A DNA stretch of 64,000 bases from Heterodontus francisci (taxonomy: Eukaryota). Each line of letters starts with the position of its first letter. Positions within the stretch are counted from its first letter, which is position 1. Below are positions 1 through 53,835 of this stretch, one piece after another. The notes below the pieces were generated by a model. It made no database searches. It was given only the letters and a program-made list of their open reading frames with translations, and was not told the DNA's origin. The stretch spans positions 86,208,252 to 86,272,251 of the forward strand of contig NC_090390.1 in the NCBI RefSeq assembly GCF_036365525.1, read 5' to 3'. A program made the position numbers and the translations under genes.

Positions 1-3000
1 GGAAGTGTGTCCAGCTGCAGCTCCTGGAAGCTCGGGTTTCAGAGCTGGAATGGCGGCTGGAAACACTGTGGAGCATCCACGAGTCTGAGAGCATTGTGGA
101 TAGCACGTTTAGAGAGGTAGTCACACCGCAGCTCAAGGGACTTGAGGAAGGAAAGGAATGGGTCACCACCAGGCAGTCCAAGAGAATCAGACAGGTAGTT
201 CAGGAGTCCCCTGGGGTCCCGCATGCAAATCGGTATTCCATTTTGGAGGCTGATGAGGCTGGTTCCTCCAGGGCGTGCGGACACAGCCAAGCTTCTGGCA
301 CCGCAAGCAGCCTGTCTGCACAGGAAGGGGGAAGAGAGGAAGAGCAATAGTAATAGGGGATTCTATAGTCAGGGGAACAGATAGGCATTACTGTGGCCGT
401 CAACGTGACTCCAGGATGGTGTGTTGCCTCCCTGGTGCCAGAGTCCGGGATGTCACTGAACGGCTGCAGGGCATCCTGAAGGGGGAGGGTGATAAGGCAG
501 AGGTCATGGTACATGTTGGTACCAATGACATAGGTAGAAAGAGGGATGAGGTCTTGCATCAAGAATTCAGGGAGTTAGGCAGTAGACTAAAAAGCAGGAC
601 CTCTTGGGTTGTAATTTCTGGATTACTCCCAGTGCCACGTTCTAGCAAGTATAGAAACAGGAGAATAGCACAGATGAATGTGTGGCTTAAGAGTTGGTGC
701 AGGAGGGAGGGTTTTAGATTCCTGGACCATTGGGACCGTTTCAGGGGAAGGTGGGATCTGTACAAGCGGGACGGTCTACATCTGAACCAGAGGAGGACTA
801 ACATCCTTGCTGGCGGGTTTGCTAGTGCTGTTGGGAGGAGTTTAAACTAACTTGCAGACTCCTAGCAGAATAGGGACACAGCTAAACACAGGAAAGCAAA
901 CACGTCAGAGGGAATACAGCGGAAGTAAGTTTCAAGGGAGTAAGACCAGGATGGAAGGCCTCTACTTTAATGCCAGGAGTATTGCAGGTAAAACGGATGA
1001 GTTAAGGGTAATGATTGACACGTGGAATTGTGATATAGTAGCCATCACGGAGACATGGTTGAGGGAGGGGCAGGATTGGCAGCTCAATATCCAGGGATAT
1101 AGAATCTTCAGGCGAGACAGAGGAGGGGGTAAAAGAGGAGGGGGTAAAAGAGGAGGGGGTAAAAGAGGAGGGGGTAAAAGAGGAGGGAGCATTGCAATAT
1201 TAGTTAAGGAGTCAGTTACTGCAGTAAGGAGAGATGATATCTTGGAGGGGGCATCAAATGAAGCTATATGGGTAGAGCTTAGGAATAAAAAAGGGACAGC
1301 CACATTGCTAGGTGTTTATTATAGACCCCCAGATCGTCAGCGGGAAATTGAGGAGCAAATATGTGCGCAATTTGCAGAGGTGTGTAAAAATAATAGGGTA
1401 ATTATATTAGGTGATTTCAACTTTCCCAACATTAATTGGGATAGTCATCGTGTTAAGGGCTTAGATGGAGTGGAGTTCTTAAAATGTATACAGGAGAACT
1501 TTTTAGCACCATATGTAGAGGATCCAACAAGGGAGAGTGCAGTGCTGGACCTAATTCTGGGGAATGAAGCCAGACAGGTGGTTGATGTGTTGGTGGGAGA
1601 GTATTTTGGTGATAGCGACCACAACATGGTACAATTTAAGCTTGTTACGGAGAAAGAAATAGACAAGTTGCAAAAAAAGGTTTTGGATTGGGGGAGAGCG
1701 AATTTTAGTAAAATAAGGCAGGATCTGGCCAAGGTGGACTGGAAAGAGTTACTTGTCGGGAAATCTACAGAAGAACAGTGGGGGGCATTCAAAAAGGAAA
1801 TGGGGAGGGTACAGGGCCAACATGTTCCCTCTAGGGTAATAGTTAGGAGCAACAAGCCCAGAGAACCATGGATGACCAGAAACATTCATGGTACGATGAG
1901 AAGGAAAAGAGAGGCTTCTAGAAAATACAAGGAGAGCAAATCAATGGAAGCATTAGTGGAATACAGAAAGTGTAGGATGGAGCTTAAGAAAGCAATTAGG
2001 AGAGCAAAGAGGGGATATGAGAAAGCTGTGACTGGTAAAAGTAGGGAAAATCCCAAGATATTCAATAAGTATATCAATGGGAAGAGGATAACCAGGGAAA
2101 GAATAGGACCCATTAGGGACCAAGGGGGAAATTTGTGGGTGGAGCCAGAGGACGTTGTTAGGGTGTTGATCGAATACTTCACATCTGTCTTCACCCAAGA
2201 GAATGAGAATGTAGATATGGAACTTAGAGAGACTGTGAGGTTCTTGAGCAAATAGTCATAGGGAGTGACAAGGTATTGAAGGTTTTGGCAGGCTTAAAAG
2301 TGGACAAATCTCCAGGTCCGGACTATTTGTGTCCCAGGATGCTGTGGGAGGCGAGGGTGGAGATTGCAGGAATTCTGACCCTAATTTTTAATTCCTCTCT
2401 GGCCATGGGGGAGGTGCCAGAGGACTGGAGAACAGCTAATGTGGTCCCACTATTTAAGAAAGGTTGTAGATATAAGCCAGGGAACTACAGACCAGTGAGT
2501 CTCACGTCAGTGGTAGGGAAACTATTGGAGAAAATTCTGAAGGAGAGAATCTATCACCACTTGGAGAGGCAAAATTTGATTAGGAATAGTCAGCATAGCT
2601 TTGTCAGAGGGAAGTCACGCCTAACAAATTTGACTGAATTTTTTGAGCATGTGACCAGGTGTGTAGATGAGGGCAGTGCAGTTGATGTCGTTTACATGGA
2701 TTCCAGCAAAGCCTTTGACAAGGTCCCACATGGGAGACTTATCAAGAAAGCAAATGCACATGAGATACAAGGTAACTTGATAAGGTGGATTCAAAATTGG
2801 CTTAGCTGTAGGAGACAGAGTGATGACAGACGGTTATTTTAGTGACTGGAAGCCAGAGTCCGGTGGCATACCACAGGGATCTGTGCTGGGTCCCCTATTG
2901 TTTGTCATTTATATAAACTACATAGATGACTATGTGGGGGGTAGGATCAGTAAGTTCACGGATGACACAAAGATTGGCCAAGTGGTTAACAGTGAGGTGG

Positions 3001-3878
3001 AGTGTCTTAGGTTACAGGAAGATATAGACGGGATGGTCAAATGGGCAGAAAAGTGGCAGATGGAATTTAATGCTGAAAAGTGTGAGGTGATGCACTTTGG
3101 AAGGAGTAATGTGACACGGAAGTATTCAATGAATGGCCTGACACTGGGAAGTTCCGTGGAACAAAGGGACCTTGGCGTGTTTGTCCATAGATCTCTGAAG
3201 GCAGAAGGGCAGGTTAATAGGGTGGTGAAAAAGGCACATGGGACACTTGCCTTTATCAATCGAGGCATAATTACAAAAGCAGGGAGGTCATGTTGGAGTT
3301 GTACAGAACTTTGGTAAGGCCACAGCTGGAGTACTGTGTGCAATTCTGGTCGCCACATTATAGGAAGGATGTGATTGCATTGGAGGGGGTGCAGAGGCGA
3401 TTCACTAGGATGGTGCCTGGGATGGAACATTTAAGCTATGAAGAGAGGTTGGATAGGCTTGGGTTGTTTTCACTGGAGCAGAGAAGACTGAGGTGACCTG
3501 ATCGAGGTGTACAAGATTGAGGGGCATGGACAGGGTGGATAGGGAGCAGCTGTTCCCCTTAGTTGAAGGGTCAGTTACGAGGGGTCACAAGTTTACGATG
3601 AGGGGCGGGAGGTTGAAGGGGGATTTGAGGAAGAACATTTTTACCCAGAGGTTGGTGACGGTCTGGAATGCCCTGCCTGGGAGGGTGTTAGAGGCTGGTT
3701 GCCTCACATCCTTTAAAAAGTACCTGATGAGTACTTGGCACGTCATAACATTCAAGGCTATGGGCCAAGTGCTGGCAAATGGGATTAGGTAGACAGATCA
3801 GGTGTTTTAATGCATCGGTGCAGACTCGATGGGCCGAAGGGCCTCTTCTGCACTGTATTATTCTGTGATTCTGTGATT
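1..3878 (+). mobile_element. CR1-clade LINE, near full length, degenerate (ORF1 coiled-coil plus SGNH/GDSL esterase, about 1-850; ORF2 APE endonuclease plus RT, about 951-3790, frameshifted)
   Basis: ORF1 esterase blocks IVIGDSIVRG, VHVGTND, DGLHLN; EN motifs YFNARS, AITETWL, GDFNFP, SDHN; RT motifs KSPGPD, GIPQGSVLGP, KFTDDTK; short-repeat tail TTCTGTGATTCTGTGATT at about 3861-3878. Confidence 0.95.
1119..1187 (+). repeat. 15-bp tandem repeat (AGAGGAGGGGGTAAA)x4.5 inside the CR1 endonuclease
   Basis: Read directly; encodes (RGGGK)x4 in frame. Confidence 0.95.
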
Positions 3879-5612: not shown

Positions 5613-5644
5613 TGGTTGCAGCACAGAAGGAGGCCATTCGGCCT

Positions 5645-7921
5645 TTCTTTAATTCATTCATGGAATGTGGGCGTCGCTGACCAGGCCAGCATTTATTGCC
5701 CATCCCTAATTGCCCTTGAGAAGGTGGTGGTGAGCTGCCTTCTTGAACCGCTGCAGTCCATGTGGGCTAGGTACACCTACAGTGCTGTTAGGAAGGGAGT
5801 TCCAGGATTTTGACCCAGCGACAGTGAAGGAATGGCGATATAGTTCCAAATCAGGATGGTGTGTGATTTGGAGGGGAACTTGCAGGTGGTGGTGTTCCCA
5901 TGCATTTGCTGCCCTTGTCCTTCTAGTTGGTAGAGGTCGCGGGTTTGGAAGGTGCTGACTAAGGAGCCTTGGTGCATTGCTGCAGTGCATCTTGTAGATG
6001 GTACACACTGCTGCCACTGTGTCGGTGGTGGAGGGACTGAAGGTTTGTAGATGCGGTTCCAATCAAGCGGGCTGCTTTGTCCTGGATGGTTTCGAGCTTC
6101 TTGAGTGTTGTTGGAGCTGCACCCATCCAGGCAAGTGGAGAGTATTCCATCACACTCCTGACTTGTACGTTGTAGATGGTGGACAGGCTTTGTGGAGCCA
6201 GGCGATGAGTTACTCACCGCAGGATTCCTAGCCTCTGTAGCCACGGTATTTATATGGTTACTCCAGTTCAGTTTCTGGTCAATAGCAGTCCCTAGGATGT
6301 TGATAATGGGGGATTCAGCGATGGTAATGCCGTTGAATGTCAAGGGGCGATGGTTAGATTCTCTCTTGTTGGAGATGGTCATTGCCTGGCACTTGTGTGG
6401 TGCGACTGTTACTTGCCACTTATCAGCCCAAGCCTGGATATTGTCCAGGTATTGCTGCATTTCTACACGGACTGCTTCAGTATCTGAGGAGTCACGAACA
6501 GTGCTGAACATTGTGCAATCATCAGCAAACATCCCCACTTTTGACCTTATGATTGAAGGAAGGTCACTGATGAAGCAGCTGAAGATGGTTGGGCCTAGGA
6601 CACTACCCTGAGGAACTCCTGCAGTGATGTCCTGGAGCTCAGATGATTGACCTCCAACAGCCACAACCTTTGCACTAGGTATGACTCCAACCAGCGGAGA
6701 GTTTTCCCCCGATTCCCATTGACCTCAGTTTTGCTAGGGCTCCTTGATGCCATACTCCATCAAATGCTGTCTTGATGTCAAGGGCAGTCACTCTCACCTC
6801 ACCTCGAGTTCAGCTCTTTTGTCCATGTTTGAACCAAGGCTGTAATGAGGTCAGGAACTGAGCGGCCCTGGCAGAACTCAAACTGAGCATCACTGAGCAG
6901 GTTATTGCTAAGCAAGTGCCACTTGATGGCACTGTTGATGACACCTTCCATCACTTTACTGATGATTGAGAGTAGACTGATGGGGCGGTAATTGGCTGCG
7001 TTGGATTGGTCCTGTTTTTTGTGTACAGGACATACTTGGGCAATTTTCCACATTTCTGGGTAGATGCCAGTGTTGTAGCTGTACTGGAGCAGCTTGGCTA
7101 GGGGCGCGCCAAGTTCTGGAGCACAGGTCTTCAGTACTATTGTCGGAATATTGTTAGGGCCCATAGCCTTTGCAGTATCCAGTGCCTTCAGTCGTTTCTT
7201 GATATCACGCGGAGTGAATCGAATTGACTGAAGTCTGGCATCTGTGATGCTGGGGACCTCAGGAGGAGGCCGAGATGGATCATCAACCCAGCACTTCTGA
7301 CTGAAGATTGTTGCAAATGCTTCAGTCTTATCTTTCGCACTGATGTGCTGGGCTCCCCCATCATTGAGGATGGGGATATTTGTGGAGCCACCTCCTCCAG
7401 TTAGTTGTTTAATTGTCCACCACCATTCATGGCTGGATGTGGCAGGACTGCAGGGCTTAGATCTGATCCGTTGGTTATGGGATCGCTTAACTCTGTCTAT
7501 CGCATGCTGCTTATGCAGTTTGGCACGCAATAGTCCTGTGTTGTAGCTTCACCAGGCTGACACCTCATTTTGAGGTATGCCTGGTGCTGCTCCTGGCATG
7601 CCCTCCTGCACTCTTCATTGAACCAGGGTTGGTCTCCTGGCTTGATGGTAATGGTAGAGTGGGGGATATGCCGGGCCATGAGGTTATAAGATTGTATTTG
7701 AGTACAATTCTGCTGCTGCTGATGGCCCACAGCGCCTCATGGATGCTCAGTTTTGCATTGCTAGATCTGTTCCAAATGTATCCCATTTAGCACGGTGGTA
7801 GTGCCACACAACATGATGGACGGTATCCTCAATGTGAAGGCAGGACTTCGTCTCCACAAGGACTGTGTAGTGGTCACTCCTACAAATACTGTCATGGACA
7901 GATGCAAGTGTGGCAGGCAAA
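5645..7921 (-). mobile_element. Non-LTR retrotransposon family B (CR1/L2-group, single ORF), end of EN through RT to 3' tail
   Basis: SDHYTV, KAMGPNNIP, NYRPISLLS, GVPQGSVLGP, MFADDC; tail GGGCAATAAATGCTGGCC..CCCACATTCCATGAATGAATT. Confidence 0.9.
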
Positions 7922-9525
7922 TTGGTATACAGTAGGGAGGGAGTTACCCTGGGAGTCCTCAACATTGACTCCGGACCCCATGACGTCTCATGGCATCACG
8001 TCAAACATGGGCAAGGTAACCTCCTACTGATTACCACCTACCACCCTCCCTCAGCTGATGACTCAGTACTCCTACATGTTGAACACCACTTGGAGGAAGC
8101 ACTGAGGGTGGCAAGGGCACAAAATGCACTCTGGGTGGGGAACTTCAATGTCCATCACCAAGAGTGGCTCGGTAGCACCACTACTGACTGAGCTGGCCAA
8201 GTCCTAAAGGACATAGCTGCTAGACTGGGTCTGCGGCAGGTGGTGAGGGAACCAACACGAGGGAAAAACATACTTGACCTCGTCCTCACCAATCTGCCTG
8301 CTGCACATGCTTCTGTCCATGACTGTATTGGTAAGATGAACTAAAGAGGTGAGGTGAGAGTGACTGCCCTTGACATCAAGGCAGCATTTGACCGAGTATG
8401 GCATCAAGGAGCACTAGCAAAACTGAGGTCAATGAGAATCAGGGGGAAAACCCTCCGCTGGATGGATTCATACCTAGCGCAAAGGAAGATGGTTGCGGTT
8501 GTTGGAGGTCAATCATCTGAGCTCCTGGACATCACTGCAGGAGTTCCTCAGGGTAGTGTCTTCGGCCCAACCATCTTCAGCTGCTTCATCAATGACCTAC
8601 TTTCAATCATGTCAGAAATGGGGATGCTCGCTGATGATTGCACAATGTTCAGCACCATTTTTGGCTCCTCAGATACTGAAGCAGTCCGTGTAGAAATGCC
8701 GCAAGACCTGGACAATATTCAGGCTTGGATTGATAAGTGACAAGTAACATTCGCGCCACACAAGTGCCAGGCAATGACCATCTCCAACAAGAGAGAATCT
8801 AACCATCTCCCCTTGACATTCAATGGCATTACTATCGCTGAATCGCCCACTATCAACATCCTAGGGGCTACCACTGACCAGAAACTGAACTGGAGTAACC
8901 ATATAAATACCGTGGCTACAAGAGCAGGTCAGAGGCTAGGAATCCTGAGGCGAGTAACTCACCTCCTGACTCCCCAAAGCCTGTCAACCATCTACAAGGC
9001 ACAAGTCAGAAGTGTGATGGAATACTCTCCACTTGCCTGGATGGGTGCAACTCCAACAACACAAGAAGCTCGACACCATCCAGGACAAAGCAGCCTGCTT
9101 GACTGGCACCCCATCTACAAACATTCACTCCCTCCACCACCGACACACAATGGCAGCAGTGTGTACCATCTACAAGACGCACTGCAGCAATGCACCAAGG
9201 CTCCTTAGACAGCACCTTCCAAACCCGCGACCTCTACCAACTAGAAGGACAAGGGCAGCAAATGCATGGGAACACCACCACCTGCAAGTTCCCCTCCAAG
9301 TCACACACCATCCTGACTTGGAACTATATCGCCGTTCCTTCACTGTCGCTGGGTCAAACTCCTGGAACTCCCTTCCTAACAGCACTGTGGGTATACCTAC
9401 CCCACATGGACTGCAGCGGTTCAAGAAGGCAGCTCACCAACACCTTCTCAAGGGCAATTAGGGATGGGCAATAAATGCTGGCCTGGCCAGCGACCCCCAC
9501 ATCCCTGAATGAATAAAAAAAAAAA
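7922..9525 (+). mobile_element. Family B LINE sequence in opposite orientation: EN segment 7922-8335 joined to RT/3' segment 8336-9525
   Basis: VYSREG..WVGNFNVHH..; ALDIKAAFDRVWH, GVPQGS, LADDC; A-rich tail at about 9510-9525. Confidence 0.9.
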
Positions 9526-14190: not shown

Positions 14191-15115
14191 AATTTAAGAG
14201 TATTTCATTGGTTGTGAAGCTCATTGGGATGTTCTGAGGTCATGAATGGCGCTATAGAAATAAAAATTTCTTCTTTTTATTTAAGGTATAAACCAAAAAA
14301 AAGTAAACAGGAGCAAAAGACAAACACGGAAATAAAAGTTTATACAGCATCGCCTCGCACCGTGAGCATGATTCAGGGTGTCAGACAACAGATTACTTTG
14401 AAGGGAAGGACTGTTATGTTGCAAAATGTGGCAGTCACCCTGCACCAGTACCAACAAGGGGCATTTGTTTTTGCTATGGTTTGCCCTGATGAGGGTGAGG
14501 TTGGCAAGGCCATTTCTGACTAATCCTTGCTTGCCCTGAAGAGGTATCCGTGTGCTTTCTTCCATTTTCATAATTACTGTCTGTACCACTGACTGGTTTT
14601 TAGGGCCACTTCAAGGGGCTTTAAAGAGCAGGGCAGAGGTGGCAGGTTTCTTTCCCTTAAGGGCATTAGTGAACCGATTTGGCTTTTGCAAAAAGCTTCC
14701 ATAGTTATTATTTCAGATTTATTCAATCCAATTTCACAACTGGCCATAATGGGATTTGAACTCATGACCTTTTGGTTGCGCATCCACAAATCTGCCCCTG
14801 CATCCCTAAATCCCACCCTGAACATCCCCAATCTCCCCCCGGAACATCCCGAAACCCAGCCCCACATCCCCAATCCTGGCAACGCCTGTCCAGACATTCC
14901 CAAACGTAGCACATGCAACATTTCCAAACTGGGAGCGAGGAGATTATCAGAAGTTGCATTTGTTCGAATGGGCATGGCAGGAGATGTGAACAGCTCTCTG
15001 AGAGAGCCAGCACAGGCACAATGGGCTGAATGGGGGATGGGCTAGAGAATGGAACTAAGGGGACAGCTCTTTCAGAGAGAAGACACTGGGACGTTGGGCC
15101 AACTGGCCTCTTTCT

Positions 15116-17532: not shown

Positions 17533-17706
17533 CTGTTGATACCACATCCGGGCTGTCTTCACACCAGCTCCCCAGATGTTAGAAAAGGTTTCCAGCACAG
17601 GGACGCTCTCACTGATGTAGTCCAGCTTGCGCAGGTGCCCACTCTCCAGTATCTCTCTGATCTTCTCAGCCATCCGTTTGCCAATGCCAGGGATATTGCA
17701 GGCTTC
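17533..17706 (-). CDS. POLL: DNA polymerase lambda, coding exon 4 (8-kDa lyase HhH and fingers HhH)
   Basis: [58 protein letters not shown]; ctccag| acceptor, |gtggga donor; 174 nt. Confidence 0.97.
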
Positions 17707-17985
17707 CTGGAGATGGCAAAGAGGAAACTGGCTCAGAAATAAGTTCACGTGCACAAATTAGGACAATTCTTTTCAGGTTTTTAGGAAAGATAATGGGATC
17801 CATTGCTTTATAAATAGAGTACAAAATCAAGAAAGTTATGCTAAGTCTTTATAAAACACTGGTTAGGCCCCAGCTGGAGGATTGTGGCCAATTCTGGGCA
17901 CCATTCTTTAGGCAGGATGTTAACCTTGGGGAGGGTGCTGAGGAGATTTACCAGAACAGCATCAGGGATGAAGGATGTCAGTTAT

Positions 17986-18640
17986 GGGGAGGCAGTGCCG
18001 TAGTGGTAATGTCACTGGATGAGTATTCCAGAAGCCCAGGCTAATGCTCTGGAGACATGGGTTCAAATCCCACCACGGCAGATGGTGAAATTTGAATTCA
18101 ATTAATAAAAATCAGGAATGAAACACTTGAAACCATGAAACCATTGTCGATTGTTGGAAAAACCCATCTGGTTCACTAATGCCCTTTCGGGAAGGAAATC
18201 TGCTGTCCTTACCTGGTCTGGCCTACATGTGACTCCAGACCCACAGCAATGTGGTTAACTCTTACATGCCCTCTGAAATGGCCTAGCAAGCCACTCAGTT
18301 GTACCTAACCACTACAAAGTCAATAAAAAGGAATGAAACCGGACGGACCACCCGGCATCGACCTAGGCACCGGAAACGACAACGGTAAACCCAGCCCTGT
18401 TGACCCTGCAAAGTCCTTACTAACATCTGGGGGCTTGTGCCAAAGTTGGGAGAGCTGTCTCACAGACTAGTCAAGCAACAGCCTGACATAGTCATACTCA
18501 CGGAATCATACCTTACAGACAATATCCCAGACACTGCCATCACCATCCCTGGGTATGTCCTGTCCCATCGACAGGACAGACCCACCAGAGGTGGTGGCAC
18601 AGTGGTATACAGTAGGGAGGGAGTTGCCCTGGGAGTCCTG
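17986..18640 (+). mobile_element. 5' end of family B LINE: tRNA-like head, about 340-nt leader, then APE endonuclease N-terminus
   Basis: A-box-like TGCCGTAGTGG 17996-18006; B-box GGTTCAAATCC 18060-18070; LTNIWGLVPK..PDIVILTESYL..RQDRPTRGGGTVVYSREG, overlapping the EN sequence at 7922. Confidence 0.85.
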
Positions 18641-19036
18641 CTCTTTCTAACGTCCTAGGGGAAGAGGACCTCCTTCCTCGCCCGAGCAGCCTGGAGGAGC
18701 ACCTGTAGGGAGGCATCCATGAACCGTAGGGCTACCCTTGATCTCCCTTCTGCCATCTCCAGATGTATTTGGATTGCCAGGGCTCCCTCTGCTCTCTCCT
18801 GAGCTGCAACTACTATTGGGCGCCATTTAAATGTGGCGCCAGCGTTGACTAAGCTGGGATTTCCCCGTCTGTGCTACCCCAGTATACGGCTCCCCCACCT
18901 GCTGGACGCTAATTGGCTGGCTCTGAGAAGAACCTGGAACGCAACCCCACTTGCCCCCCCCATCCCCCCCCCCCCCCCGTGGCAATAACATCCGCTTCCG
19001 GTCACAAGTTTGGGGCTTCCAAGAAAATCCCAGCCT
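18641..19036 (-). mobile_element. PIF/Harbinger-like transposon end with the start of a Myb/SANT-like ORF (pseudogenised)
   Basis: From ATG 18756: MAEGRSRVALRFMDASLQVLLQAARARKEVLFP*, resembling the Myb/SANT-like N-terminal helix; terminus GGCTGGGATTTTC next to TAA. Confidence 0.55.
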
Positions 19037-27991: not shown

Positions 27992-29030
27992 ATAGGAAGA
28001 TGGTTGTGGTTGTTGCAGGTCAATCATCTCAATCCCAGGACAGCATTGCAGGAGTTCCTCAGGGTAGTGTCCTCGGCCCAACCATCTTCAGCTGCTTCAT
28101 CAATGACCTTCGCTCCATCATTAGGCCAGATGTGGGGATGTTCGCTGATGATTGCACAATGTTCAGCACCATTCGCAATTCCTCAGGTATTGAAGCAGCC
28201 CGTGTCCATCTGTAGCAAGACCTGGTCAACATCCAAGCTTGGGCTGATAAGTGGCAAGTAATATTCGCTCCACACAAGCGCCAGACAATGACCATCTCAA
28301 ACAAGAGAGAATCTAACCATCTCCCCCTGATGTTCAATGGCATTACCATCACTGAATCCCCCACTATCAACATCCTGGGGGGAGGGTGTTACCATTGACC
28401 AGAAGATGAACTGGACCAGCAACGTAAATGCTGTGGCTACAAGAGCAGGTCAGGGATTCTGCAGCGAGTAACTCACCTCATGTCTCCCCAATGTCTGTCC
28501 ACCATCTAAGTCAGGAGTGTGATGGAAAACTCTCCACTTGCCTGGATGAATGCAGCTCCAACAACACTCAAGAAGCTCGACACCATCCAGGACAAAGCAG
28601 CCCACTTGATTGGCATCCCATCCACCACCTTCAACATTCATTCCCTCCACCACTGCCGCACAGTGGCAGCAGTGTGTACCATTTACAAGATGCACTGCAG
28701 CAACTCACCAAGCCTCCTTTGACAGCATCTTCCAAACCCATGACCTCTACCACCTAGAAGGACAGGGTAGCAGATACACGGGAAAACCACCATCTGCAAA
28801 TTCCCCTCCAAGCCACACACCATCCTGACTTGGAACTATATCGCCGTTCCTTCACTGTCGCTGGGTCAAAATCCTGGAACTCCCTTCCGAACAGCACTGT
28901 TGGTGTACCTACCCCACATGGACTGCAGCGGTTCAAGAAGGCAGCTCACCACCACCTTCTCAAGGGCAATTAGGGATGGGCAATAAATGCTGGCATAGCC
29001 AGTGACACCCACATCCCACGAATTAATAAA
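27992..29030 (+). mobile_element. Family B LINE, 5'-truncated, inserted in an L2 remnant (27893-29270, minus)
   Basis: GVPQGSVLGPTIFSCFIND..MFADDC; family B tail. Confidence 0.9.
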
Positions 29031-29321
29031 AGAACATAAGGAGATATTATGACAGGAGACCAAAAGCTTGGTCAAAGAGGTAGGTTTTAAGGAGCATCTT
29101 AAAGAAGGGGAGAGAGGTGGAGAGGTTTATGGAAAGAATTCAAGAGTTTGGGGCTCAGGCGGCTGAAGGCATGGCCACCAATGGTAGAGCAATTAAAATT
29201 CAGGATGCTCAAGAGGCTGAAACTGAAGGGTTGCATAGATCTAAGAGAATTGTAGGGCTAGAGGGGAATAGAAAAGGGGATATTGTAGGGGGGGGGGGGG
29301 GGGGGGGGAGTTTTACTGTAC

Positions 29322-29821
29322 CTGTCCTGCAGAGGCTTGTATTGTTCCACTGTTTTCCTCAGCTGTGGTCTCTCTTGGCTTCTCAACAAAAGGTTCTTCT
29401 GCCTCGGTGCAGTTCAACTCGGCATCTGACTTTTTCCCCAATTGGCTGTTGATCTCTGTGTTCTCTTGCTGACCCTCTCCCCCTGACCCCTGAGTCTTGA
29501 TCTGCTGCTCAGGCTGCAGGTACCTGTCTGGGATGAAGATGCTGTAGCCCGCCGTGCTCAGAACTTTCCTCTCCGAGATGCATAAACTGAGCCACGTGGA
29601 TCGCACTAGCTGGACTTTGGGAGGCAGCACCTCCAGCTTCAGGAGGCGAAAGGCACGGTCACAATCCATCCCATCGTCTATGATCACATGGGTAACGGCA
29701 GGGGAGAAAGCAAGGCTGACCGAACCACCGTTCTGTATAATCTGCTTCTGAAAAATTTCTGTCCGGGCCTTTCCAATCCCTGCCTGGACAATGTATGCTG
29801 TCATTCCACTCAACCAGGGCT
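29322..29821 (-). CDS. POLL: DNA polymerase lambda, coding exon 2 (BRCT domain and acidic linker)
   Basis: PWLSGMTAYIVQAGIGKARTEIFQKQIIQNGG..VTHVIIDDGMD..LVRSTWLSLCISE; ttctacag| acceptor, CAG|gtacag donor; 500 nt, phase 1-0. Confidence 0.93.
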
Positions 29822-31386: not shown

Positions 31387-31574
31387 GCTCTGCACGACAG
31401 ACTTGCAGTCTTGGCCAACTGTGAACCAACCTGTTCCAATGATCAGGATTTTAATTCCACAAAATAAATTTCAAATACCCCCTATACACCTCCATGTTCT
31501 CCTCTCTTCTTACCCCATCTGGTGTCCAGGATTGGACAAAATACTCCAGCTGAGGCCTAACCAGTGATTAATAC

Positions 31575-32920
31575 TGTCGATCATCAGCAAAATGATGCAA
31601 GATGGCGTTGACAGTGCTACCAAGTGGCACTTACTCAGCAATAACCTACTCACTATCACTCATTTTGGGTTCTGCCAGGGCCACTCAGTTCCTGGCCTCA
31701 TTACAGCCTAGTCCAAAATGGACAAAAGAGCTGAACTCAAGAGGTGGGGTGGGAATGACTGCCCTGGACACCAAGGCAGCATTTGACCGACTGCGGCATC
31801 AAGGAGCCCTAGGAAAATTGGAGTCGATAGGAATCAGGGGCTCTCCACTGGTTGGAATCATTCCCAGCACAAAGGAAGATGGTTATGATTGTTGGAGGTC
31901 AATCATCTCAGTCCCAGGACACACTACAGGAGTTCCTCAGGGTAGTATCCTAGGCCCAACCATCTTCAGCTGCTTCATCAATGACCTTCCCTCCATCATA
32001 AGGTCAGAAGTGGGTATGTTCGCTGATGATTGCACAATGTTCAGCACCATTCGCAACTCCTCAGACACTGAAGCAGTGTGTGTCCATATGCAGCAACACA
32101 TGGACAACATTCAGGCTTGGGCTGAGAAGTGGCAAGTTGCATTTGTGCCACACAAGCACCAGGCAATGACCATCTCAAACGAGAGAGAATTTAACCATCT
32201 CCCCTTGACATTCAATGGCATTATCATCGCTGAATTCCCCACTATCAACATCCTGGGGTTTAACATTGACCAGAAACTAAACTGGACCAGCCATTTAAAT
32301 ACCGTGGCTACAAGAGCAGGTCAGAGGCTGGACATTCAGCAGTGAACAACTCACCTCCTGATTCCCCAGTGCCTGTCCACCAGCTACACGGCACAAGTCA
32401 GGAGTGTGATGGAAAACTCTCCACTTGCCTGGATGAGTGCAGCTCCAACAACACACAAGAAGCTCGGCATCATCCAGGAAAAAGCAACCCACTTGAGTGG
32501 CACCCCATCCACCACCTTCAACATTCACTTCCTCTATCACCGACACACAGTGGCAGCAGTGTGTACCATCTACAAGATGCACTGCAGCAATTCACCAAGG
32601 CTCCTTTGACAGCACCTTCCAAACCCGCAACCTCTACCACCTGGGACAAGGGCAGCAGATACACGGGAAAACCACCATCTGCAAGTTCTCCTCCAAGCCA
32701 CACACCATCCTGACTTGCAACTATACCACCGTTCCTTCACTGATGCTGGGTCAAAATTTTGGAACTCCCTTCCTAACAGCACTGTGGGTGTACCTACCCC
32801 ACATGGACTGCAGCGGTTCAAGGCGGCAGCTCACCACCACCTTCTCAAAGGGAATTGGGGAGGCGCAATAAATATTGGCCTAGCCAGCAATGCCAACATC
32901 CAGTGAACGAATAAAAAAAA
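31575..32920 (+). mobile_element. Family B LINE, 5'-truncated
   Basis: WTKELNSRG..ALDTKAAFDR, GVPQGSILGP, MFADDC, A-rich tail. Confidence 0.9.
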
Positions 32921-52223: not shown

Positions 52224-52784
52224 TGACTACTCTATCAGAACCTTTTATAATTTTAAAGATCCCTATTAGTTCACCTCTCAGCCTTCTCTTTTCTAGAGAT
52301 AAGCAATCCAGACTGTGTATCCTTTCCCGATTAGTTATTATCTCTCCATTCTGGTATCATCCTTGTAAATCATCTTTGAACCCTCTCCAGTGCCCTTTTT
52401 CCATTTTACAATATAGTGACCAGAACTGTGCGCAGTACTCTGTGTAGTCTAACCAAGGTCCTATACATGTTCAGCATAATGTCTCTGTTTCAATTCTATC
52501 CCTCCAGAACTAAACGCCAGTGCTTGATTTGCTTTTGTATGGTCTTGGTGACTTGTGCCACAACTTTGATTTGTGTATTTATATTCCCAAATTCCTTTGC
52601 TCCTCTTAGATTCTTATTTTCTTAGTAATATGTGACTTTTCTTACCAAAATATAATACTTATGGAAGTTGAAATTCATTTTCCAATTATATGCCCATTCT
52701 GCAGATTGTTGGAGCATGCAAGATGTGAGGGCAGAAGCCAAGCCTGTCTCTCTTTCCCCACTCGTATGTAAACATACATTTGTT

Positions 52785-53835
52785 TTTATTCATTTCACGG
52801 AATGTGGGCGGCGCTGGCCAGGCCAGCATTTATTGACCATCCCAACTGACCTTGAGAAGGTGGTGGTGAGCTGCCTTGAACCGCTGCAGTCCATGTGGGA
52901 TACGTACACCCACCGTGCTATTAAGAAGGGAATTCCAGGATATTGACCTAGCGACAGGGAAGTAATGACGATATAGTTCCAAGTCAGGATGGTGTGTGGC
53001 TTGGAGGGGAACTTGCAGGTGGTGGTGTTCCTGTGCATTTGCTGCCCTTGTCCTTCTAGGTGGTAGAGGTCACGGGTTTGGAAGGTGCTGCCTGAGTAGC
53101 CTTGGTGGTTTGCTGCAGTGCATCTTGTAGATGATGTACACTGCTGCCATTGTGCATCAGTGGTGGAGGGAGTGAATGTTTGTGGACGGGGTGCCAGTCA
53201 AGTGGGCTGCTTTGTCCTGGATGGTGGTGTGCTTCTTGAGTGTTGGAGCTGCACCCATCCAGGCAAGTGAACAGTATTCCATCACACTGTTGATTTGTGC
53301 CTTGTAGATGGTGGACAGGCTTTGGGGAGTCAGCAGATGACTTACTCGCTGCAGGATTCATATGGCTACTCCAGTTCAGTTTCTGGTCAACGGTAACCCC
53401 CCTCAAGGATGTTGATGGTGAGGGAGTCAGCGATCGTAATGCCGTTGAGTGTCAAGGGAAGATGGTTAGATTCTCTCTTGTTGGAGATGGTCATTGCCTG
53501 GCACTTGTGTGGTGTGAATGTTACTTGCCACTTATCAACCCAAGCCTGGATATTGTCCAGGTCTTGCTGCATTTCTACACTGACTGCTTCAGTATCTGAG
53601 GACTTGCGAATGGTGCTGAACATTGTGCAATCATCAGCGAACATCCCCACTTCTGATCTTCTGATTGAAGGAAGGTCATTGATGAAGCAGCTGAAGATGG
53701 TTGGGCCTAGGAGACTATCCTGATGAACTCCTGCAGTGATGTCCTGGAGCTCAGATGACTGACCTGCAACAACCACAACCATCTTCCTTTGCGCTAGGTA
53801 TGATTCCACCCAGCAGAGTGTTTTCCCCCAGATTC
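52785..53835 (-). mobile_element. Family B LINE, 5'-truncated
   Basis: SYLAQRKMVVVV..MFADDC; family B tail. Confidence 0.9.

What the first reader, a model, noticed from the sequence alone, without database searches (positions are those of the whole stretch)
17986..18640. tRNA-headed LINE: a Pol III promoter fused to an endonuclease-RT ORF, with no ORF1
Seen: a tRNA-like head (A box 17996-18006, B box 18060-18070, spacing like a long-variable-arm tRNA) continues through a leader of about 340 nt into APE endonuclease codons. There is no intervening SINE tail, TSD or ORF1. The last codons (VYSREGVALGVL) overlap the EN segment at 7922, linking this head to the family B copies. Known: LINEs normally use Pol II internal promoters, and tRNA heads define non-coding SINEs. 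Inference: family B may be an autonomous SINE-LINE hybrid. Only one 5' end is present in this window.
Basis: partly seen in the sequence, partly recalled or inferred. Interest (0 to 1): 0.85.

Follow-up and report, generated by a model that had tools for sequence, protein, structure and literature searches.

The report
Shark LINE starting with SINE head
This stretch is the broken-off front end of a very abundant shark jumping gene (a LINE) whose untranslated leader is the same sequence as the tRNA-like head and body of a short SINE, which is unusual because such heads normally mark non-coding elements copied by RNA polymerase III.

Summary
At 17986-18640 a tRNA-type A box and B box pair (chance about 0.01 per window) runs through a SINE-like body, a 32-nt spacer and an ATG at 18333 into APE endonuclease codons. 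There is no SINE tail and no ORF1 in between. The copy is cut off at 18639/40.

Contigs laid from three species show that the body-to-leader-to-endonuclease junction is not unique to this locus. Diverged copies (82-88% alike) bridge it in all three, and four predicted proteins from other copies read across it. The free SINE is this 5' part up to 18300 joined to the last ~76 nt of the LINE. It is therefore an internal-deletion derivative, or a sharer of both ends.

The scan found the same headed LINE, about 3.2 kb long, at ten or more other places in this genome. I treat those notes as leads.

Pol III transcription of the LINE is untested. T-run depletion in this window is real but only marginally beyond composition. 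I found no prior description in the papers searched.

The parts
17986..18085 (+). tRNA-like head; the 5' edge is uncertain within 17986-17992
   Evidence: A/B box pair. An anticodon-arm-like hairpin appears in the fold. ARAGORN and Rfam do not call it a tRNA. It is highly repeated in three species (table 2).
17996..18006 (+). A box, TGCCGTAGTGG
   Evidence: 10 of 11 matches to TRGCNNAGTGG.
18060..18070 (+). B box, GGTTCAAATCC
   Evidence: 11 of 11 matches to GGTTCRANNCC. There are 3 B boxes in the window against 0.65 expected, and this is the only one paired with an A box.
18086..18300 (+). Body shared with the free SINE. This copy lacks about 25 nt near 18109-18133.
   Evidence: Loose ends at 18109 and 18133 give the missing SINE segment. 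Loose ends 'behind' 18300/18302 in all four runs continue as the LINE 3' tail, CAAGGGCAATTAGGGATGGGCAA... (table 7).
18301..18332 (+). LINE-specific end of the 5' UTR, absent from the free SINE
   Evidence: Depth stays high across it in three species, and contigs 1, 9, 10, 17, 18, 25 and 26 bridge 18300 with at least 31 nt on each side. P0003 and P0151 read through it.
18333..18335 (+). Start codon of the single ORF
   Evidence: P0012, P0004 and P0037 start here and run into the endonuclease. tblastn places their first residues at 18333.
18333..18639 (+). First ~100 codons of the ORF. The APE endonuclease domain begins at 18407. There is one frameshift in 18395-18416.
   Evidence: Pfam Exo_endo_phos E 5.8e-5. 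The frame change is seen by tblastn of P0012.
18639..18640 (.). Break where this copy is cut off; the LINE does not resume in the window
   Evidence: Depth falls about 260-fold or more at 18643 in all runs. Loose ends 'behind' 18639 give the normal LINE continuation. No continuation was found by blastn or tblastn.
18535..18600 (+). Very stable hairpin inside the endonuclease coding region
   Evidence: -44.8 kcal/mol, z -5.5, and 0 of 200 shuffles fold as well.
7916..9525 (+). Family B copy, 5'-truncated and internally deleted, with the family's 3' tail at 9450-9525
5644..7926 (-). Family B copy, 5'-truncated, with RT ORFs and tail
28002..29034 (+). Family B 3' fragment with tail; no SINE head or body upstream
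31572..32920 (+). Family B 3' fragment with tail; no SINE head or body upstream
52784..53835 (-). Family B 3' fragment with tail; no SINE head or body upstream

Best explanation
The stretch is the front 655 nt of a dead copy of an abundant, ORF1-less LINE of sharks that encodes an APE endonuclease and a reverse transcriptase ('family B').

The element begins with a 347-nt 5' UTR made of three parts:
- a degenerate tRNA-derived head with A and B boxes;
- a body;
- a 32-nt spacer.

The single ORF starts at ATG 18333, and the endonuclease domain begins about 25 codons later.

The partner SINE is the same 5' UTR up to position 18300 joined directly to the last ~76 nt of the LINE. The simplest origin is one internal deletion of the LINE, giving a 'bipartite' non-autonomous derivative that kept the head.

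This copy later lost everything beyond 18639 through a local rearrangement, and it carries one frameshift.

Shown here:
- the anatomy of this locus;
- the body-leader-ORF junction as a family feature in three species;
- the SINE-type and LINE-type continuations at 18300;
- the tail as part of the LINE itself.

Inferred:
- that the head belongs to the master LINE and not only to this copy;
- that the element's RNA must start at the head's first base to be inherited. A type 2 Pol III promoter would do this (its start lies about 10 nt before the A box, as here), but an internal Pol II promoter could do it too.
For: Read evidence:
- Depth stays high and continuous from 17987 to 18642 in DNA contigs of three organisms, then drops sharply at 18643.
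- Seven listed contigs, 82-88% alike to the window, bridge 18300 with at least 31 nt on each side (records 1, 9, 10, 17, 18, 25, 26).
- Loose ends at 18300/18302 in all four runs read CAAGGGCAATTAGGGATGGGCAA..., which matches the LINE tail at 9450-9479 at 29 of 30 positions.
- Consensus letters specific to each species, at 18306, 18391, 18445, 18460, 18535/6 and 18585, show that the 5' region amplified separately in each lineage.
- One contig of organism B joins the head end (18109, plus 26 nt of SINE consensus) to the endonuclease at 18441 (table 5c).

Protein evidence:
- P0003 and P0151 read from 18278 into the endonuclease in one frame.
- P0006 joins body 18189-18302 to the endonuclease.
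- P0001 carries a body-derived peptide followed by leader and endonuclease.
- P0012, P0004 and P0037 start at the ATG.

Five 5'-truncated family B copies in the window carry the tail with no SINE 5' part upstream, so the tail belongs to the LINE.

The breakpoint in the SINE coincides exactly with the body/tail boundary, as a single deletion predicts.

Leads not tested by me: notes on ten or more other loci of this genome describe 3.2-3.3 kb copies with the same head.
Against: No contig or protein I could read links the A/B-box region to the endonuclease in an undeleted copy other than this one. The Logan contigs are too short, and the window copy's own deletion at 18109-18133 breaks the alignments.

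Head depth is lower than body depth. That fits a body shared by several SINE families, or a LINE that starts inside the body.

Kojima's model (PMC5786205) has heads added to bipartite LINEs to make SINEs, not heads carried on autonomous LINEs.

No target-site duplication can be read, because the 3' end is missing.
Confidence: 0.75

Rival explanations
1. One-off or recurrent recombinant. The master LINE's 5' UTR contains only the body. The SINE is that bipartite LINE with a tRNA head added, as in Kojima's model. This copy acquired its head through template switching or ectopic recombination between a SINE and a LINE within their homologous 5' region.
For: The published model, with examples from the RTE and Vingi clades (PMC5786205). 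Head depth is lower than body depth, and loose ends 'before' 18158 are heterogeneous. I could not read a second undeleted head-to-endonuclease copy.
Against: The loose ends at 18158 are recognisably diverged SINE sequence, not unrelated flanks (table 7). A contig in another species carries head and endonuclease together (table 5c). Many notes from other windows describe full-length headed copies (unchecked by me).
Confidence: 0.15
2. A target-specific LINE that always inserts at one site of the SINE. Under this reading the 'head and body' upstream and the 'tail' downstream are merely the two halves of the target SINE.
For: It would explain why the SINE and LINE continuations part exactly at 18300. 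Target-specific LINEs are noted close by in this genome (Tx1 note).
Against: Five 5'-truncated family B copies in the window end with the tail but have no SINE head or body upstream. The tail is therefore retrotransposed as part of the LINE.
Confidence: 0.03
3. Chance juxtaposition or nested insertion of an ordinary SINE next to an ordinary LINE 5' end, or an assembly join.
For: The region is packed with retroposon fragments.
Against: The same junction occurs in diverged copies in three species and in four predicted proteins. A retroposed SINE would have brought its tail, which is absent.
Confidence: 0.02

Closest known systems
SINEs whose bodies derive from the 5' part of their partner LINE, and bipartite non-autonomous LINEs (Kojima 2018, PMC5786205; Bov-tA, WALLSI, AfroSINE-like SINE2-1_EC)
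   Same: The free SINE consists of a tRNA-type head, the LINE's 5' region and the LINE's 3' tail. An internal deletion is the likely origin.
   Different: That survey found such 5' contributions only from the RTE and Vingi clades, and it places the head on the SINE only. Here the autonomous, protein-coding copy itself carries the head. The RT is not RTE-like: its distant named relatives are invertebrate 'X-element' (jockey-type) polymerases. The clade was not placed by a tree.
RIME/ingi and NARTc/L1Tc of trypanosomes, and EhSINE/EhLINE of Entamoeba
   Same: The non-autonomous element shares both the 5' end (with promoter) and the 3' end of its autonomous LINE (PMC1874656 abstract; otherwise from my own knowledge).
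   Different: Their shared 5' module is a Pol II-dependent promoter (Pr77), not a tRNA-derived box A/box B module.
Ordinary tRNA-derived SINEs of cartilaginous fish (HE1 V-SINE with HER1; SacSINE1 Deu-SINE with an L2 tail; PMC3747384, PMC5499810)
   Same: A tRNA-type head with A and B boxes, a body, a LINE-derived tail, very high copy number, and presence across sharks.
   Different: Those descriptions share only the 3' tail with a LINE. I could not identify the body here as a V, Deu or Meta domain, because no reference sequences were at hand.
Jockey/CR1-group LINEs, such as the CR1-like family A in this window (275-3400)
   Same: APE endonuclease plus RT plus a conserved C-terminal region, with frequent 5' truncation.
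   Different: Family A has an esterase-type ORF1 (Lipase_GDSL_2) and 3.6 T-runs per kb. Family B has no ORF1 at this 5' end and 0.5 T-runs per kb.

Membership tests
APE-type non-LTR retrotransposon (LINE) | N-terminal apurinic/apyrimidinic-type endonuclease domain | tested here: met
   Pfam Exo_endo_phos, E 5.8e-5, profile positions 4-80, for 18407-18655. Exo_endo_phos_2 matches the continuation in the copy at 7871-8188.
APE-type non-LTR retrotransposon (LINE) | Reverse transcriptase domain in the same element | tested here: inconclusive
   RVT_1 is found in family copies at 8345-8737, 5777-6664 and 6799-7530. This fragment stops before the RT and is linked to those copies only by a 44-nt overlap and by the loose ends at 18639.
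APE-type non-LTR retrotransposon (LINE) | Copies truncated at variable 5' points that share one 3' end | tested here: met
   Six tails lie in the window, on copies of 137 to about 2280 nt.
APE-type non-LTR retrotransposon (LINE) | Target-site duplication around the copy | not testable with these tools
   The 3' end of this copy is lost at 18639/40.
tRNA-derived SINE (SINE2) | Head with Pol III A and B boxes | tested here: met
   the pair is unique in the window, with 0.01 expected by chance.
tRNA-derived SINE (SINE2) | Short, non-coding, ending in a LINE-derived tail | tested here: not met
   At this locus the head and body run into an ORF, and no tail is present. The free SINE form does exist elsewhere (loose ends at 18300/18302).
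SINE/bipartite element carrying the partner LINE's 5' and 3' parts (Kojima 2018) | The SINE body is collinear with the LINE 5' region, and the SINE tail with the LINE 3' end | tested here: met
SINE/bipartite element carrying the partner LINE's 5' and 3' parts (Kojima 2018) | Partner LINE of the RTE or Vingi clade | tested here: inconclusive
   Close relatives are only shark proteins. Distant named relatives are 'X-element'-type polymerases. No labelled reference set was available for a tree.
Type 2 RNA polymerase III transcription unit | A and B boxes at workable spacing, with the unit starting about 10 nt before the A box | tested here: met
   Spacing is 53 nt. The element's edge at 17986-17992 lies 4-10 nt before the A box.
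Type 2 RNA polymerase III transcription unit | No T4+ terminator inside the unit | tested here: inconclusive
   There are 0 T-runs in these 655 nt, but only 0.5 are expected. Family pieces show 3 runs in 7.96 kb against 7.2 from dinucleotide shuffles. A synonymous-codon shuffle gives 2 observed against 5.3 expected (P 0.05). Family A shows no depletion.
Type 2 RNA polymerase III transcription unit | Transcription by Pol III | not testable with these tools
   All runs laid were contigs, and the 'RNA?' run is only a guess.
Target-specific LINE inserted in a repeat | Truncated copies still flanked upstream by the target's 5' half | tested here: not met

The most novel reading that the evidence does not exclude
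Family B is an autonomous, protein-coding LINE whose full-length 3.2-kb RNA is made by RNA polymerase III from the tRNA-derived A/B-box head. Its sense strand is kept free of T-run terminators for that reason, and its uncapped RNA is still translated. The partner SINE is then the same Pol III unit with the ORF deleted.
Probability: 0.25. Interest if true: 0.9.

Novelty: new variant of a known kind. Interest (0 to 1): 0.68.

Why it matters
SINE heads and LINE promoters are normally treated as two separate solutions: Pol III for short non-coding parasites, Pol II for the coding elements they parasitise.

A coding LINE that carries the SINE-type head, with the SINE as its simple deletion derivative, matters in three ways:
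- It gives a direct example for the long-open question of where SINE bodies come from, extending Kojima's 5'-LINE hypothesis beyond the RTE and Vingi clades.
- It shows one way an ORF1-less LINE can still carry a promoter through every retrotransposition cycle.
- It makes the question 'can Pol III make a translatable 3-kb retrotransposon RNA?' testable in a natural system.

The family is present in at least three species laid here, and in horn shark and sawshark proteins. It is therefore old and successful.

Tried and rejected
The DNA around P0003, P0012 and the other proteins could not be fetched, and no other full-length copy could be read.
- **The search for related loci** with P0002 found no relative in metagenome, viral or prokaryote genome contigs.
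- **The exhaustive protein search** found only short family B fragments of 269 aa or less, and no intact ORF. The word-index search with P0003 had only 8 candidates.
- **Rfam and ARAGORN** give no tRNA. The weak miRNA-like Rfam hits reflect the hairpin at 18535-18600.
- **A diverged SINE-like copy at 14400-14790 (-)** seemed to carry the LINE-type junction, but the similarity beyond 18300 is not significant (z 1.7). I dropped it as support.
- **The N-terminus of P0006** may derive from a B-box region, but tblastn gives no significant match. This is suggestive only.
- **T-run avoidance** is clear as a rate (0.5 against 3.6 per kb). It is mostly explained by composition and low Phe content, and the codon-order effect is marginal.
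- **The 44-nt overlap** between the end of this fragment and the start of the copy at 7916 could mean one element split by rearrangement. I found no flank evidence for that.
- **Literature**: seven searches found no description of a tRNA-headed autonomous LINE. The Vingi paper is not held. Repbase and Dfam could not be consulted.

Full report
**What is there**

Positions 17986-18640 read, 5' to 3', as follows:
- a tRNA-like head;
- a body;
- a short spacer;
- an ATG at 18333;
- the first ~100 codons of an ORF whose APE endonuclease domain begins at 18407.

The A box (17996-18006, 10 of 11 matches to consensus) and B box (18060-18070, 11 of 11) lie 53 nt apart. They are the only such pair on either strand of the 64-kb window, and shuffles give 0.01 pairs per window.

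The head is not a tRNA gene. ARAGORN and Rfam call nothing, and its fold is no better than shuffles, although an anticodon-arm-like hairpin survives.

The endonuclease codons match Pfam Exo_endo_phos from profile position 4 (E 5.8e-5), so this is the very start of the domain. All three frames between head and ATG contain stops, which rules out an ORF1 in this copy. No SINE/LINE tail lies between head and ORF.

The copy ends abruptly at 18639/40, and the LINE does not resume anywhere in the window. This copy has one frameshift between the ATG frame and the endonuclease frame.

**Is the junction unique?**

No. I laid Logan contigs of DNA runs from three organisms, plus one possible RNA run, on 17700-18900 at 80% likeness.

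- Summed depth is high and continuous from 17987 to 18642 in all runs. It falls about 260-fold or more at 18643, and the outer flanks are single-copy.
- Seven of the listed contigs bridge position 18300 with at least 31 nt on both sides (records 1, 9, 10, 17, 18, 25, 26). At 82-88% identity to the window, they are other copies and not this locus.
- Several positions have different majority letters in organism A than in B and C (18306, 18391, 18445, 18460, 18535/6, 18585). The 5' region was therefore amplified separately in each lineage.

Predicted proteins from other copies give independent support:
- P0003 and P0151 read from 18278 through the spacer into the endonuclease in one frame.
- P0006 joins body 18189-18302 to the endonuclease. 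It has the same leader deletion that appears as a recurrent read joint (18303 to 18414).
- P0001 carries a peptide translated from the body, followed by leader and endonuclease.
- P0012, P0004 and P0037 start at the ATG equivalent to 18333, which fixes the start of the ORF.

**Relation to the SINE**

In all four runs, hundreds of contigs leave the window sequence at 18300/18302 and continue as CAAGGGCAATTAGGGATGGGCAA... (table 7). This is the 3' tail of family B, matching 9450-9479 at 29 of 30 positions.

The free SINE is thus 17986-18300 (plus about 25 nt that this copy has lost near 18109-18133) joined to the last ~76 nt of the LINE. The SINE's body/tail boundary coincides exactly with the point where the LINE continues. 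One internal deletion of a headed LINE is therefore the simplest origin.

**Rivals**

- *Target-specific LINE sitting inside a SINE.* This would give the same picture. However, five 5'-truncated family B copies in this window end with the tail and have no SINE head or body upstream, so the tail is part of the LINE.
- *Chance juxtaposition.* This is excluded by the recurrence of the junction.
- *Recombinant copy.* This is the serious rival. The master LINE's 5' UTR would hold only the body, the SINE would be a bipartite LINE with a head added (Kojima 2018, PMC5786205), and this copy would be a recombinant.

I could not settle the third rival with my own data.

My only independent link is one contig of organism B that joins the head end, plus 26 nt of SINE consensus, directly to the endonuclease at 18441 (table 5c).

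The scan's notebook lists ten or more other loci in this genome described as 3.2-3.3 kb copies with the same head, single ORF and few T-runs, three of them with follow-ups. I did not check these notes, but they raised my odds that the head belongs to the family from about one in three to about three in four.

**Pol III?**

The element's 5' edge lies 4-10 nt before the A box, which is where a type 2 promoter would start transcription. An internal Pol II promoter could do the same.

T-runs (T4 or longer) on the sense strand of family B pieces in this window occur at 0.5 per kb, against 3.6 per kb in the CR1-like family A. Most of this difference follows from composition:
- dinucleotide shuffles expect 7.2 runs against 3 observed;
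- synonymous-codon shuffles expect 5.3 against 2 observed (P 0.05), with no depletion in family A.

This is consistent with the Pol III reading but not decisive. No run laid can show transcription.

**Comparison with what is known**

Kojima's survey found LINE 5' parts in SINE bodies only for RTE and Vingi. It also stated that bipartite ORF-less derivatives are known only from RTE, Ingi, Vingi and R2.

Family B's close relatives are shark proteins (Heterodontus, Pristiophorus). Its distant named relatives are invertebrate 'X-element'-type polymerases. It therefore looks jockey-group rather than RTE, but I could not build a labelled tree.

Shark SINEs described so far (HE1, SacSINE1) share only tails with LINEs. 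Seven literature searches found no tRNA-headed autonomous LINE. Repbase and Dfam could not be checked.

**Verdict**

The structural reading is supported for body-leader-ORF and is likely for the head. The Pol III mechanism remains open. I rate it a new variant of a known kind, with an interest score of 0.68.

Noticed in passing
window 18535-18600 (+): A ~30-bp imperfect hairpin lies inside the endonuclease coding region (-44.8 kcal/mol, z -5.5). Majority-letter changes in the family keep the inner stem (A-U to G-U at 18571 and 18524) but break the outer stem in two species. It sits just 5' of the point where the copy at 7916 begins and where this fragment ends.
   Followed up: partly
window 18596-18639 and 7916-7959: The 5' fragment ends 44 nt after the position at which the 5'-truncated copy at 7916 begins (93% identity over the overlap). 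This is either coincidence, a breakage or RT-stall hot spot next to the hairpin, or one element split by rearrangement.
   Followed up: partly
window 5644-7926 (-) and 7916-9525 (+): Two family B copies lie head to head with about 10 nt of overlap, each with its own 3' tail. The plus-strand copy has an internal deletion that joins the endonuclease C-terminus to the middle of the RT at about 8336.
   Followed up: partly
window 14400-14790 (-): An old, diverged SINE-like copy with a B-box region and part of the same body. Its apparent LINE-type continuation is not significant.
   Followed up: yes
joints 18303->18414 and 18316->18414: A subfamily in all three species lacks about 100-110 nt of the leader, including the ATG. 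In it the body abuts the endonuclease directly, and P0006 is such a copy.
   Followed up: partly
table 2: The LINE-specific leader and endonuclease start carry 20-54% of the summed depth of the SINE body's end. That is unusually high for a LINE 5' end and suggests many 5'-intact copies, or a non-autonomous form that keeps this region.
   Followed up: no
window 29313-29813 (-): A 166-aa ORF with a BRCT domain (Pfam E 1.1e-5). It is probably an exon of a host DNA-repair or polymerase gene among the repeats.
   Followed up: partly
window 275-3400 (+): A CR1-like LINE (family A) with an esterase-type ORF1 (Lipase_GDSL_2, E 3e-15) followed by endonuclease and RT ORFs. I used it as the control for T-run counts.
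   Followed up: partly
window 26674 (-) and 27211 (+): Two further B-box matches lie beside the 23.5-26.7 kb minisatellite, presumably from other SINE copies.
   Followed up: no
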